Positions 7,863 through 58,988 of a DNA stretch of 61,337 nt are shown here, in pieces. The notes under the pieces are model-generated. The model had not been told where the DNA came from, did no database searches, and worked only from the letters and a program-made list of their open reading frames with translations. Both the position numbers and the translations under genes were made by a program. This DNA is from Cyanophora paradoxa CCMP329 (taxonomy: Eukaryota > Plantae > Glaucophyta), in contig QPMI01000327.1 in assembly GCA_004431415.1 (NCBI GenBank), positions 1 through 61,337 of the forward strand, in the 5' to 3' direction. Numbering within the stretch: position 1 is the stretch's first letter; each line of letters opens with the position of its first letter.

Positions 7863-7869
7863 GGGGTAC
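7863..7869 (+). promoter_or_regulatory. GGGGTAC candidate promoter element upstream of SNF5
   Basis: About 60 nt upstream of ATG 7932; the same word recurs in other promoters. Confidence 0.55.
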
Positions 7870-7931
7870 GGCGCAGACGCGCGCTTCGCAGTTGCGGCCA
7901 GCTGCAGGAGCCGCGCCGAGCTTCTGCCGCG

Positions 7932-10369
7932 ATGCAGAAGCAACCGGTGAAGTGCGTTTCGGTCGCGTGGCAACCGCGACCAGGACCGCATTCTCACGCC
8001 TCGCCGCGCAGGCTCGAGAGGGTGCCCGGTCGGAGCGACAACTGGGAGCCTCCGGTCAAGCGAACGCGGTGCGGGCTGTCCGCGGCCGCCGCTCGCGCAG
8101 CGCCACCCGCTTTTCGAACGGGGTGTGCAGGTTCGCGGACCACCTCGTTCCAATCCGCCTCGACATCATGAGCACGGACAAGACACGTCAGCTAAAGGAC
8201 AGCTTCCTGTGGAACATCCAGGACGAGATGTCCCCGGAGGAGTTCGCCCTCACACTCGTCGAGGACGAGCGCCTGCCCGTGGAGTTCATCGAGTACATCA
8301 AGGCGTCGATCACGAACCAGCTGAACGAGTACAAGAGCTCCAAGCGCTTCGTGCCCACCGCGCGCGGCGAGGACAGGCATCTGATCAAGGTGCCGCGCCG
8401 CGTCCGCCGCCGGCGCTGCCGCATCGGCGGCCGACGAGGGGGCGGGCAGATCGAGGCGCGGGTCGGGGACGTGGTGCTGCTGGACCAGGTGGAGTGGGAC
8501 TGCAGCGAGCCGCGGAACAGCCCGGAGGAGTTCGCCAAGCACCTGGCCGCCGAGCTCGGCCTCGGCGGCCAGTTCGCCAACGTCATCGCCATCCAGATCC
8601 GCGAGCAGCTCAACGAGCACGCGGTGCGCCCTCCCCTCGCGCGGAGGCGGCGCGGGGCGGGGCGGCGCTGAGGCGGGGCGGCGCGCAGGTGGCCAAGGAG
8701 CAGAAGGAGTTCATCCTGCCGGGGAACGTGGAGCGAAAGCGGCTGCTGCGGGAGGACGACCAGGTGGCGCAGTGGGAGCCGGCCCTCGACCGCCTCTCCC
8801 GCCAGGAGCTCCACGAGACCGTCGAGTTCGAGACCGCCGTCGCCCGGTCCGCCCCCGTGGCCCGCCCGCGCGCCCCTCGGCCCCCGCCGAGCGGGCCGCG
8901 CGCAGCTCGAAGCGGCGGAACACGTACGTGATCGAGCAGACGCGGGCGAGCGCGGTGCTGAACAGCGGGTACCGGCGCTACGCGCGCAAGGGCCGCTTCT
9001 ACCTGGGGCCCGGCATGGTCGAGCAGGTCCTCGCCCTCACCTCCCAGGAGGAGCTCGCCGTCCTCGAGGCCGAGCGCCGCGCCCGCGCCGAGGCCGCCGG
9101 CCCCCGCGCCGCCCCCTCCCACTGCCTCGGCTGCGGGGCCCCCGGCTCGCGGGAGAAGCCCATCGCCTTCCTCGGCAAGTGGGGGTCCGCCCCCTCTCGC
9201 TCCTCCCCGAGGGCGCGGGGCGCGTGGGCCGACGGGGCGCGCAGGGCGTCGACGCTGTGCGAGAAGTGCGGCACGGTGCACAGGCTGACCATGGGCGCCC
9301 CCGACGCGCCCCCGCCCCCCGTGCCCGAGGAGTTCCGCAACGCGGCGCGCGTGCGCGAGTTCGTGGCGGCGCAGGGGCGCTGCGGGCGACGCTGCCGCAG
9401 ACCCTGCAGCCGCTGCCGCAGCCGCCGGTGCAGCCCTCCTACGCCGCCATCTCCGCCCCGCCCGCCGCCCCCCCGGCCCCGCCCACGCCGCCCACGCCCT
9501 CGCCGCCCCCGCGTCTCCACGGGGCCCTCCGTCGGCGCCCCTCCCACGCGGCGAACGCCGCGGCGGCGGCGGCGGCGGCGGCGGCGGCGGCCTCGGCGGG
9601 GGCGGGCGGGGGCCGGGGCGGTCGGTGGCGGATCAGATGTGGCAGGAGGTGGGGGGCCCTGAGGTGCAGATCACGTACGACCGCCTCGGGCACGTGCTCG
9701 TGGAGGGCAAGCCGGTGCTCGTGGAGGGGAAGCCGATCGCCAAGAAGCGGGGCGGCGCTCGCGGGCCGAGGCCGACGCCATCGAGGCCGCCAAGGTCAAG
9801 GTCCTCGAGGAGCGCCGCGCCCGCAACCGCGCCGCCGGCATCACGGGGCCGGCCCCGTGCCCCCGCCCAAGCCGCCAGCCGCGGCCCCGGCCCCCTCGCC
9901 CCCCGCGGGGCCCTCTTCCTCCTCCGCGGGGCGGCCCCGCAGGCGGCGCCGAAGCAGCAGCCGGCGGCGGCGCAGGGCGGGGCGGGGGCAGCCAGCAGCA
10001 GGTCTCGGCCAAGCGGCGGCCAAGGCGGCGGCCAAGGCGGCCGCCGCGCAGGCCGCCGCGCGGGCCTCGGGGGCGGCTACGCGCCGACGGCGGTGCGGGC
10101 GGCGCCGACGTCGGCGGCGATCGCGGCGCCGGCGGCGGGGGCTCGCTGGGGCACGCGGGGGCCCCTTCCAGCCGGCCCCGAGCGGCGTGCGCCGCCTCGT
10201 CGTCAAGACCAAGTCCGCCAAGCCGCCGCGCCCCAGCGGCGAGCAGCCCGCCGCCGCCCCGGCCCCCGTCAAGACCGGCCTCGGCCTCAAGATCAAGATC
10301 AAGCTCGGCGGCTCCGGCGGCGGCTCGCAGCCGTCCCCGGCCGGCCCCGGCGGCGACGCGCACTTCTAG
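7932..10369 (+). CDS. SNF5: SNF5/SMARCB1/SFH1-family chromatin-remodelling subunit with a GATA-like Zn finger
   Basis: LVPIRLDI..LKDSFLWNIQDEMSPEEFALTLVEDERLP and LLDQVEWDCSEPRNSPEEFAKHLAAELGLGGQFANVIAIQIREQL (SNF5 repeats); spliced CLGC-x19-CEKC; C-terminal LKIKIKL. Confidence 0.88.
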
Positions 10370-10523
10370 CCCCTGCCTTCCCCTGCCCCTCCCTCTCTGC
10401 CCCCTCTCTCCCTCTCTCGCAGCAGCCATGCGTGCATTGGACGTACGCGTACGATTACAGACGGCCGGGGGAGGCGCGTGCGGATGGGGGTTGGACGGGG
10501 TGGAGAGCCGGGGAAGGTCGGGC

Positions 10524-56860: not shown

Positions 56861-57100
56861 CCGCCGAGTTCTCCCGCAGATCGGCAGCTGGCGCCATGCA
56901 ACGCTGTGATGCGAGCGAAAGTTCCACAATCACCGTGGCACACGGAAAGAAGAGCGGAGAAGGGATCATCGGATCGACTAGGGCAGCGAGGGCGGCAAGG
57001 GTGCCCTCGCTCGGGCACCGCGATGGCCGGGGGCTCAAACTCCCGGCGGCTAGAACTCGAGAGAGTCAAAACTGGCGGCCCGGCGGGAGGGGAGGCGGGT

Positions 57101-58950
57101 TCAAGGGGAGACGAGGTTCTCGATGCCGCTCTTGACCTGCGGCGGGGGCTCAGCGGGGGCGGCCGGGGGGCCGGGGGGGCGGGGGCAGGGGGGCGGGCCT
57201 TGGCGGAGACGATGCGGTCGCCGACCTTGAGGTCCTTGAGGACGTCGGCGCCCGTCGTCACGTACCCGAAGACCGAGTAGCGCCCGTCCAGCAGGTTCGC
57301 CCCCGCGGGGGTCAGCTCGGCCTCGAAGAGCACCCAGAAGAACTGGGAGGAGGCGCCGTCGAACTCGAACTCGGGGCGGGCCATCGCCATGGTGCCGTAG
57401 GCGGAGAAGGGCAGCACGGGCTCCGCCTTGGGCCGCCCCGCGTCCTCCAGCGTCACCCCGTACGTCGGGCTCTTGTCCCCCTTGACGAGGATCTCCAGCG
57501 GGATCTTCCGCTCCTCCCCCGTCTTGGGGTCCACGAAGCCCTCCGCCGGCCCCGCCGGGTCGCCCGACTGGACTGCGCGCACCACCGCTCAGGCCCCCCG
57601 CGAGGGCGGGCGGCCCGGGCTGCTCTGGCGCGCGGGCGCACTGACGAAGCCGTCGGAGCGGGTGATGTCGAGGCCGTCGTAGAAGCCGCGCTGCACCAGG
57701 TCCACGAAGTTGCCCGCCGTGATCGGCGCGCTGCCCGCCCCGCCTCGGCGGGCGGCGGCGGAGACGGGGAGCGCCGGCGCGCACCTGTAGCCGTCGACGA
57801 CAGCGACGATGCGCTCGCGGGCCTTGCGCTCCACGCCGCCCTCGGCCTGATGGGGGCGGCGCGGGTGAGCGGCGGGGGCGGGGGCGGGGGCGGGGCGGAG
57901 GGGGCGGGCGGGCCTTGGTGGCCTCGACGTCGAACTCGACGGTGGCGCGCCCCAGCAGCCGCGGCAGCCCCTTGTACTCCTCCGGGATCGAGTACGGGAA
58001 CTGCACGCCCCCGCCCCGCCCCGTCGGCCCGGCGGGCGGGGCGGGCGGGAGGAGGGGCGGTGCGCAGGCCGCGTGCGCGCACCTCGGAGATCATGAGCTC
58101 CTCGAGCTTGCCGACCTTGTCGAGGCTCTGCTGCTGCAGAAGCGCCACGACGTCGCCGTTCTTCTCCTCGATCGACTCGCGCATCTGGTTCAGGTAGCCC
58201 TGCACCTCCTCCAGCAGCTTCTTCGCCTGCGCCGCCCCGCGGTCGCGCCCCGGCCCCGCCCCGCACGCGCACGTGCGCCAGATTCGATCGCACCTCCTCC
58301 TGGCGCGCCGACGGCACGGCGGCAAGGATCTGGGCCTCCTGCTTGGTTGCCGCGCTCTGGGCCTTGTTCCACTCGGCGCGGATCTGCGTCCACTTCGCGT
58401 TCATAGGAATCCGGAAAGCGTTCGTCATGTTCTCGAGGGCGAGCTGGCACTCCCTGGACGACCGGCGTCAGCCGTCTGGCGCCCCGCTTCGTTTCCTTCA
58501 CGGCGCGCACCGGATCGGCTTGTTGTCGACCGGGAGCGAGAGCCGGAGGAGCGAGTACGCGCCCTTGACGGGGTTGGAGGACGGCAGAGCGTACGACGGC
58601 TGGCTGACGCCGGCGCCGGCGATCATAAGCGAGGCAATCGCCGCCATGGCCGTCTTCAGCGAGGCGCTCTCGCGGTGGCGCGCCCAGCCGGCCTCGACGA
58701 ACTGACGGATATCCGCAGCTGCACGCGCCACGCCGGTCTCCTCATTCTGGCTGGAGCAGCGAACGGATGTCGACGCGGTCGCGAAGTTGCGAACGGAGGC
58801 GGACGGCTGGGTTGACAGCTTCGAACCGAAGAAGCTGCGATGAAGGCCGGTTCGACTGCGGTGCTCGAGGCGGCTGACGGCGGAACGGCCGGTGATAGCC
58901 GAAACTGCGGTCGGAGCTGCGAGCGGGACGGCGACGGAGAAGGCCTCCAT
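57101..58950 (-). CDS. CYP38: Thylakoid-lumen cyclophilin, CYP38/TLP40 type
   Basis: Bipartite presequence [29 protein letters not shown]; [11 protein letters not shown]; [18 protein letters not shown]; VVDGY|[20 protein letters not shown]; RKIPLEI; [13 protein letters not shown]; SSQFFW; [11 protein letters not shown]. Confidence 0.92.
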
Positions 58951-58981
58951 GACTACAGGACGCCCTAGGTGATTCGACCAC

Positions 58982-58988
58982 GTACCCC
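58982..58988 (-). promoter_or_regulatory. GGGGTAC in the 154-bp divergent CYP38/KAE1 spacer
   Basis: cgtacccccg. Confidence 0.55.

What the first reader, a model, noticed from the sequence alone, without database searches (positions are those of the whole stretch)
7863..58988. Recurrent GGGGTAC/GGGGTAG element marks nearly every promoter
Seen: exact GGGGTAC at 7863(+), 16632(+), 19992(+), 35476(-), 43644(-), 46542(+) and 58982(-), each within about 10-70 nt of the nearest start codon. Variants are GGGGTAG at 29786(-), 29802(+) and 54201, GGGGTAT at 56383, and GGGGATAC(-) at ~3638 and ~26201. I noticed only two exact copies in coding sequence (23514, 26887), although these 5' spacers are a small fraction of the window. 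The motif occurs in either orientation, usually once per divergent spacer, and I saw no clear TATA boxes in those spacers. Inference: an orientation-independent housekeeping or core promoter element and its binding factor, which I do not recognise from known core promoter motifs.
Basis: partly seen in the sequence, partly recalled or inferred. Interest (0 to 1): 0.85.

Follow-up and report, generated by a model that had tools for sequence, protein, structure and literature searches.

The report
Promoter word GGGGTAC in Cyanophora
A seven-letter DNA word, GGGGTAC, sits where transcripts begin in about half of the gene promoters in this stretch of the alga Cyanophora paradoxa, far more often than chance allows, so it is probably an undescribed promoter signal; the evidence comes from one 61-kb window only.

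Summary
The window is nuclear DNA of the glaucophyte Cyanophora paradoxa: a EukProt protein named tig00001371_g8424.t1 matches its exons at 100%. I placed the start codons of 21 genes and defined 14 promoter zones (2,310 nt, 3.8% of the window). Seven copies fall in seven different zones, against 0.13-0.31 expected. GGGGTAC is the top 7-mer under four background models, and none of 400 simulations reached its score. The other 12 kb of 5' intergenic DNA and the 3'-3' gaps hold none. The 45 kb of gene body hold 2, as expected.

Spliced RNA contigs over two divergent promoters put all four transcript 5' ends within about 3-22 nt of the motif's edges. TATA boxes are essentially absent.

"Nearly every promoter" is an overstatement. 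The exact word covers 7 of 14 promoter regions (12 of 21 genes), and an eighth has an inverted GGGGTAG pair. The other variants are unconvincing. Orientation independence and a housekeeping role are not shown.

Other windows of this genome, noted earlier in the scan, carry the same word (as GTACCCC) inside introns. A naive genome-wide test would therefore be confounded. I could not fetch more Cyanophora DNA, so there is no replication.

The parts
7863..7869 (+). GGGGTAC, 62 nt before the ATG (7932) of the SNF5 gene. This is a tandem promoter and the word reads towards the gene.
16632..16638 (+). GGGGTAC in a divergent spacer. It lies 11 nt before the ATG (16650) of an organellar bL21 gene (+) and 154 nt from the ATG (16477) of a kinase-like gene (-).
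19992..19998 (+). GGGGTAC in a divergent spacer. It lies 61 nt before the CCT-eta ATG (20060, confirmed by the EukProt model) and 119 nt from the ATG (19872) of a protein kinase (-).
35476..35482 (-). GGGGTAC on the minus strand, 32 nt before the ATG (35443) of an unnamed minus-strand gene. This is a tandem promoter. A CGGGTAC copy lies 18 nt further upstream.
43644..43650 (-). GGGGTAC on the minus strand between CFAP58 (-, ATG 43581) and TyrRS (+, ATG 43708). RNA contig 5' ends are at about 43626 (CFAP58) and 43641 (TyrRS).
46542..46548 (+). GGGGTAC between Erv26 (-, ATG 46513) and CFAP43 (+, ATG 46725). RNA contig 5' ends are at about 46520 (Erv26) and 46561 (CFAP43).
58982..58988 (-). GGGGTAC on the minus strand. 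It lies 31 nt before the ATG (58950) of a CYP38-like cyclophilin with a transit-peptide-like N-terminus and 116 nt from the Kae1/TsaD ATG (59105, +).
29786..29808 (.). Inverted pair CTACCCC-N9-GGGGTAG inside a 59-nt inter-ATG spacer. Each GGGGTAG points at its own gene: 10 nt to the ATG at 29775 (-, transit-peptide-like) and 26 nt to the ATG at 29835 (+, GH42 beta-galactosidase). This is the only variant site in a comparable position.
23514..23520 (-). Exact copy inside a gene body. It counts as background: gene bodies hold 2 copies against 1.9 expected.
26887..26893 (+). Exact copy inside a gene body. It counts as background.

Best explanation
GGGGTAC (probably GGGGTAS followed by a purine) is a short DNA-level promoter element of Cyanophora paradoxa nuclear genes. 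It lies within about 30 bp of where transcripts begin in TATA-less, densely packed and often bidirectional promoters.

The likely mechanism is that a sequence-specific DNA-binding factor, or part of the general initiation machinery, recognises the word and fixes the zone where RNA polymerase II starts, on one or both sides.

Shown: strong confinement of the word to promoter zones; its position between or at mapped RNA 5' ends in two promoters; and the absence of TATA boxes.

Inferred: that it is bound by a factor, that it determines initiation, and that it works mainly in the direction in which it reads GGGGTAC.
For: Seven copies lie in 7 of 14 promoter zones (2,310 nt) against 0.13-0.31 expected. 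GGGGTAC is the top 7-mer under four backgrounds, and 0 of 400 simulations match it. It is also top in the ATG-independent gap test.

There are no copies in the remaining 12 kb of 5' intergenic DNA or in the 3'-3' gaps, and gene bodies are at expectation.

There is one copy per promoter and the flanks share no sequence, so this is not a repeat family.

Spliced RNA contigs place the 5' ends of CFAP58 (about 43626), TyrRS (43641), Erv26 (about 46520) and CFAP43 (about 46561) within 3-22 nt of the motif's edges. The word is left out of three of the four transcripts, and my exon models reproduce the depth bins.

TATAWA is nearly absent upstream of the 21 ATGs.

In the 59-nt promoter at 29.8 kb, two GGGGTAG copies in inverted orientation each point at their own gene.
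Against: The evidence is one 61-kb window with seven sites, and the motif was chosen on the same data. No true 5'-end data exist: Logan contigs cannot give exact starts.

The offsets from motif to RNA end differ among the four transcripts, from 3 nt upstream of the word to 22 nt downstream of it.

In two cases the ATG follows the word by only 10-11 nt. That forces either a very short leader or a start at or upstream of the word.

Half of the promoters lack the word, including PGK.

In other windows of this genome the same heptamer, read as GTACCCC, is reported to be abundant in introns. It therefore has at least one other context or cause.
Confidence: 0.5

Rival explanations
1. It is an ordinary regulatory transcription-factor site shared by a subset of genes (a regulon), not a general or core promoter element. 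It lies close to starts only because Cyanophora promoters are very short.
For: Only 7 of 14 promoter regions carry it. Inter-ATG spacers are only 59-351 nt, so any promoter motif must lie near a start.
Against: The genes served are functionally unrelated: cilium, tRNA synthetase, chaperonin, chromatin remodeller, organellar ribosome, secretory adaptor. All seven copies lie in the 16% of 5' gap DNA nearest the ATGs, with none in the other 12 kb.
Confidence: 0.17
2. The promoter copies are a side effect of whatever makes or uses GTACCCC elsewhere in this genome. That could be a splice-signal-like word (for example a 5' splice site of 5'-UTR introns or of upstream antisense transcripts) or a motif-generating mutational process. 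On this view it is not a transcription-initiation signal.
For: Earlier scan notes on other windows report GTACCCC on the RNA strand near the ends of many roughly 60-nt introns. Read as GTACCCC, the word lies 116-154 nt upstream of three partner ATGs, which leaves room for such an intron. For example, GTACCCC to an AG 61 nt downstream before the ATG at 16477 (read).
Against: None of the 17 RNA-supported introns in this window contains the word. GGGTAC/GTACCC is at expectation in this window's gene bodies. The TyrRS contig runs unspliced through the word. The Erv26 ATG is only 28 nt from the word, too close for an intron.
Confidence: 0.12
3. It acts in the RNA, as a 5'-UTR element affecting translation or stability.
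For: The word lies 10-62 nt upstream of start codons, a region that could be leader sequence. It is included at the extreme 5' end of the TyrRS contig in one run.
Against: Contigs of CFAP58, CFAP43 and Erv26 stop 13-22 nt short of it in every run. It occurs on either strand relative to the nearest gene.
Confidence: 0.05
4. It is chance or composition: a moderately AT-containing word is simply commoner in the lower-GC spacers.
For: The whole-window count is only 9 against 4.2 expected. GTAC is 2-4 times over its dinucleotide expectation everywhere in the window. The hypothesis was formed on the same data.
Against: Expectations computed from the zones' own di- and trinucleotide content give 0.13-0.31 against 7 observed, and 0 of 400 simulations come close. 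Equally low-GC intergenic DNA outside the zones has no copy.
Confidence: 0.03

Closest known systems
Initiator (Inr) and other start-site-centred core promoter elements of RNA polymerase II (from general knowledge; not tested against a library)
   Same: It is a short word lying at or within a few tens of bp of transcript 5' ends in TATA-less promoters. GTAC contains a pyrimidine-purine step (TA) on both strands, as starts usually do.
   Different: The sequence is unrelated to YYANWYY/BBCABW. The exact +1 is not mapped here. The offsets to the four RNA ends are not constant. A G4 run plus a palindromic GTAC core is not a described Inr.
Transcription-factor sites typical of mammalian bidirectional, TATA-less promoters, such as GABP/ETS, NRF1, YY1 and ZNF143 (from general knowledge)
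   Same: It lies between closely spaced divergent starts, about one copy per promoter, serving unrelated genes.
   Different: The sequence and lineage differ and no factor is identified. The NRF1-like palindrome GCGCATGCG is not enriched here.
GTAC-core copper response element bound by the SBP-domain protein CRR1 in Chlamydomonas, and SPL sites in plants
   Same: It shares the GTAC core.
   Different: The flanks differ (GGGGTAC here, not CGTAC-type). Those are conditional regulatory sites, not start-site elements. SBP factors are reported absent from glaucophytes (PMC7455551).
The intron word GTACCCC of the same genome (scan notes s1-515119, s1-512853)
   Same: It is the identical heptamer, read on the other strand.
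   Different: That word is strand-specific to the RNA and lies inside tiny introns in gene bodies. The copies here lie outside transcripts or at their first bases, and none of this window's 17 checked introns has it.

Membership tests
TATA box | TATAWA-like word about 25-35 bp upstream of the start | tested here: not met
   TATAWA occurs 3 times within 250 nt upstream of 21 ATGs, and none is upstream of a mapped RNA 5' end. GGGGTAC has no resemblance to it.
Initiator (Inr) | The element overlaps the +1 nucleotide | tested here: inconclusive
   RNA contig 5' ends lie 13, 18 and 22 nt downstream of the word and 3 nt upstream of it. Contigs cannot give exact starts.
Initiator (Inr) | Fixed orientation relative to the transcript | tested here: inconclusive
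   The word reads GGGGTAC towards the gene in 2 of 2 tandem promoters and in both halves of the double-copy promoter. It points at the nearer ATG in 3 of 5 divergent promoters, with one tie and one opposite.
Initiator (Inr) | Mutation shifts or abolishes initiation | not testable with these tools
   This needs in vitro transcription or reporter assays.
Bidirectional-promoter transcription-factor site | Lies between two divergent transcription starts | tested here: met
   CFAP58/TyrRS 5' ends are at 43626/43641 with the word at 43644-43650. Erv26/CFAP43 5' ends are at 46520/46561 with the word at 46542-46548. Five of 7 divergent inter-ATG spacers carry one copy.
Bidirectional-promoter transcription-factor site | Bound by a sequence-specific factor | not testable with these tools
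   No binding data are available.
SBP/CRR1 GTAC-core element | GTAC core | tested here: met
   All copies contain GTAC.
SBP/CRR1 GTAC-core element | An SBP-domain protein is present in the organism | not tested
   I did not search the proteome. The literature reports SBP absent from glaucophytes (PMC7455551), so membership is unlikely.
Dispersed repeat or transposon end carrying a promoter | Sequence similarity extends beyond the word | tested here: not met
   No flanking column is conserved among the seven sites within 25 nt on either side.

The most novel reading that the evidence does not exclude
The heptamer is a directional initiation signal: transcription starts a short way downstream of GGGGTAC in the direction it reads. 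The dense sense-strand GTACCCC patches reported in introns elsewhere in this genome would then point backwards. They would act as internal antisense promoters and feed the bidirectional and antisense transcripts and small RNAs reported for Cyanophora (PMC6704402). One word would then link promoter architecture, intron content and antisense regulation.
Probability: 0.07. Interest if true: 0.8.

Novelty: new member of a known kind. Interest (0 to 1): 0.5.

Why it matters
The papers I could search describe nothing on how nuclear promoters work in glaucophytes, one of the three primary-plastid lineages. The 2019 genome paper does not contain the word 'promoter'. A short, specific start-site word would give a handle for three things: annotating 5' ends in a genome whose gene models lack UTRs, building expression constructs, and finding the factor that replaces TATA-dependent start selection in this very GC-rich, tightly packed genome. 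It also bears on the separate puzzle of why the same heptamer floods introns elsewhere in the genome.

Tried and rejected
Replication on more Cyanophora DNA failed. Two protein searches with window ORFs returned nothing. Twenty exact look-ups of window ORFs were not in the protein collection. The one Cyanophora protein found (EukProt) has no contig on record. I did not scan metagenome or viral collections, because a 7-mer cannot be searched there and Cyanophora is unlikely to be present.

Several variants were not accepted as the same element: GGGGATAC (3637, 26201), GGGGTAT (56383) and GGGGTAG (54201). They lie about 290 nt from the ATG, or 265 nt (68 nt from a possible upstream ATG), or in the opposite orientation, or carry an inserted base.

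An apparent identical 13-nt offset between the word and two RNA 5' ends disappeared once a 4-nt ambiguous splice junction was resolved. The offsets are 13 and 18 nt.

Counting how many zones share any one 7-mer could not discriminate, because GC-only words are common. I replaced it with a min-P simulation.

Rfam found no RNA gene in the window and ARAGORN found no tRNA. GCGCATGCG (NRF1-like) is not enriched. A literature search for the word itself was swamped by KpnI primer tails.
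Full report
WHAT THE WINDOW IS. The window is 73% GC, with lower-GC (50-60%) spacers. It holds intron-rich eukaryotic genes, including CFAP43, CFAP58, TyrRS, CCT-eta, SNF5, Kae1/TsaD, Erv26, organellar bL21, PGK, a GH42 beta-galactosidase, F-box proteins, an LRR protein and kinases. A EukProt protein named tig00001371_g8424.t1 matches the CCT-eta exons at 100% identity. 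That naming style is the one used for the 2019 Cyanophora paradoxa assembly (PMC6704402), and earlier scan notes named the same organism. That paper describes densely packed genes, about nine short introns per gene and no UTR annotation, and it never uses the word 'promoter'.

CHECKING THE OBSERVATION. GGGGTAC occurs nine times, at exactly the stated places. For the whole window this is only about twice the shuffled expectation (4.2), so the count alone is weak. The signal lies in where the copies are.

I located start codons for the 21 genes whose 5' ends lie in the window. This used:
- reading of the sequence;
- Pfam matches for gene identity;
- the EukProt N-terminus for CCT-eta;
- spliced RNA contigs for 42-48 kb.

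This gives seven divergent gene pairs and seven tandem promoters. I defined 14 promoter zones: the inter-ATG spacers of the pairs, and 150 nt upstream of each tandem ATG. They total 2,310 nt.

Results for the zones and their surroundings:
- Seven of the nine copies fall in seven different zones.
- Expected counts from the zones' own di- or trinucleotide composition, from all 5' gaps, or from the whole window are 0.13-0.31 (P 1e-10 to 4e-8). GGGGTAC is the best 7-mer under all four backgrounds.
- In 400 sets of order-2 simulated zones, the best P for any 7-mer never fell below 8e-7.
- With 5' gaps defined only by a self-trained coding HMM (13 gaps, 14.4 kb), GGGGTAC is present in 7 gaps against 0.9 expected. 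It ranks first by a distinct-gap statistic, at P 6.5e-6.
- Outside the zones the same gaps (12 kb, same GC) hold no copy. The 3'-3' gaps hold none, and 45 kb of gene body hold 2 against 1.9 expected.
- GTAC alone is 2-4 times over its dinucleotide expectation in every compartment. In exons this is plausibly NNG-TAC codon junctions, which is my inference. It cannot explain a roughly 25- to 50-fold excess confined to promoter zones.
- The seven sites share nothing beyond the heptamer, apart from a purine at the next position in six of seven. They are therefore not copies of a repeat.

POSITION RELATIVE TO GENES. Read in the direction GGGGTAC to ATG, the gaps to the start codon are:

| Gene | Gap (nt) |
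|---|---|
| SNF5 | 62 |
| CCT-eta | 61 |
| CFAP58 | 62 |
| unnamed gene at 35443 | 32 |
| CYP38-like | 31 |
| bL21 | 11 |
| CFAP43 | 176 |

At 29.8 kb the two start codons are only 59 nt apart. There an inverted pair CTACCCC-N9-GGGGTAG gives each gene its own copy pointing towards it, with gaps of 10 and 26 nt. In both tandem promoters the word reads GGGGTAC towards the gene. In the five single-copy divergent promoters it points at the nearer ATG three times, once the two are tied (CFAP58 62 nt, TyrRS 57 nt), and once it points away (Erv26 28 nt, CFAP43 176 nt). This is a trend, not proof of directionality. The clustering of gaps at 10-11, 31-32 and 61-62 nt is unexplained.

RNA EVIDENCE. One search found runs that hold about 60% of the words of the stretch, and these proved to be spliced, so they are RNA. 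Laid on 42000-47999 they give 17 or more introns and the extents of four transcripts. Using the record coordinates, and checking them against the depth bins (which my exon models reproduce to within about 1%), the furthest 5' ends are:
- CFAP58: about 43626. Its exon 1 ends with the ATG at 43581-43579, followed at once by a 97-nt intron.
- TyrRS: 43641.
- Erv26: about 46520.
- CFAP43: about 46561.

The words at 43644-43650 and 46542-46548 therefore lie in the 14-nt and 40-nt gaps between back-to-back transcripts. The contig ends lie 18, 22 and 13 nt downstream of the word for CFAP58, Erv26 and CFAP43. For TyrRS the end lies 3 nt upstream of it. Contigs cannot give true starts and usually stop short of them, so the real starts are at or even nearer the word.

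Three of the four transcripts do not include the word. This argues for a DNA signal rather than a leader-RNA signal. TATAWA is almost absent upstream of the 21 genes.

HOW IT MOST LIKELY WORKS. The best reading (about 0.5) is a start-site-proximal promoter element. A factor recognises it and fixes the initiation zone in TATA-less and often bidirectional promoters.

Whether it is a true initiator, with starts at the TA step of the palindromic GTAC core, or a site some 15-25 bp upstream of +1, cannot be decided here. The two genes whose ATG follows the word by 10-11 nt favour starts at or upstream of the word. The TyrRS contig, which runs 5 nt beyond the A of GTAC, argues against a strict single-nucleotide initiator.

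Rivals:
- A regulon-type factor site (0.17). The unrelated functions of the genes argue against it.
- A by-product of the genome's GTACCCC phenomenon, for example a 5' splice site of leader introns (0.12). Against this: none of this window's 17 introns has the word, they begin GTGCG or GC, and TyrRS is unspliced across it.
- An RNA leader element (0.05).
- Chance (0.03).

COMPARISON WITH KNOWN SYSTEMS. Functionally it resembles initiator-type elements and the factor sites of mammalian bidirectional promoters. That comparison rests on general knowledge, not on a test. The sequence matches none of them. The GTAC core recalls SBP/CRR1 sites, but SBP factors are reported absent from glaucophytes. 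I found no paper describing promoter motifs in Cyanophora.

THE REST OF THE GENOME. Earlier notes of this scan on other pieces of the same genome report the same heptamer, as GTACCCC on the RNA strand, crowded into tiny introns of some genes. None of those notes mentions promoters. I could confirm only that this does not occur in the present window.

That test was no enrichment near starts against a composition-matched genome background.

LIMITS. The evidence is one window, seven sites and no exact 5' ends. I found no way to fetch further Cyanophora DNA with these tools. The start codons of genes without the motif (for example those placed at 27825 and 53937) are less certain. Moving them cannot add or remove exact copies from the count, because all nine are accounted for.

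VERDICT. The feature is real and statistically solid within the window. It is a new member of a known kind: lineage-specific start-site promoter motifs. Interest is moderate (0.5), and would be higher if the link to the intronic copies proves functional.

Noticed in passing
window 7863-59105 (gaps listed): The distance from the word (read GGGGTAC/G towards the gene) to the ATG falls into tight groups: 10 and 11; 26, 31 and 32; 61, 62 and 62; and 176 nt. I have no mechanism for this. It may reflect preferred leader lengths, or chance.
   Followed up: partly
window 6315-7800, 26150-26350, 28200-28600, 35750-35800, 54040-54450, 56400-56720: The long low-GC intergenic stretches are packed with short palindromic words (AGCTGCAG, AAGCTTAAGCTT, CTAGCTAG, GAATTC, CATATG, ATGCAT) and an (ATCATG)n microsatellite. 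They lie mostly downstream of gene 3' ends and may be 3'-end or termination signals, or decayed repeats.
   Followed up: partly
window 42107-47542: Of 17 RNA-supported introns (48-122 nt), 3 are GC-AG (42108-42171, 44472-44528, 44663-44722). That is far above the usual 1% or so, but GC-AG is not 'as common as GT-AG' in this sample. Typical ends are GTGCG...GCGCAG.
   Followed up: partly
window 43482-43581 (minus strand): The CFAP58 start codon is the last three bases of exon 1. ATG is followed directly by a GTGCGG 5' splice site and a 97-nt intron. The exon model fits the RNA depth bins.
   Followed up: partly
window 45336-45560: The convergent genes TyrRS (+) and Erv26 (-) appear to share or overlap 3' UTRs. 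One RNA contig runs from the last TyrRS exon into the last Erv26 exon (record 5). This matches the overlapping UTRs described for this genome (PMC6704402).
   Followed up: no
window 40117-53048: Two cilium genes, CFAP58 (-) and CFAP43 (+), lie 3 kb apart. Each shares a GGGGTAC-bearing divergent promoter with a non-ciliary gene: TyrRS and Erv26 respectively.
   Followed up: no
window 28190-28245 (minus strand): A 17-nt near-perfect inverted repeat (GGGGATTCGCGTCCTCG ... CGAGGACACGAATCCCC) lies just upstream of a possible alternative ATG of the gene at 26.5-28.2 kb.
   Followed up: no
window 5' gaps: CGTACGC occurs in 9 of 13 5' gaps (3.3 expected, P 8e-4). One case is a GGCGTACGCC palindrome 4 nt before the F-box ATG at 38394. 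It could be a second GTAC-core promoter word, or just the general GTAC excess.
   Followed up: partly
window 58950, 29775, 16650: Three genes begin with N-termini that look like organelle transit peptides (MEAFSVAV..., MAAFAS..., MLRLASRAAV...). The first two have the early phenylalanine that I recall as typical of cyanelle import signals.
   Followed up: no
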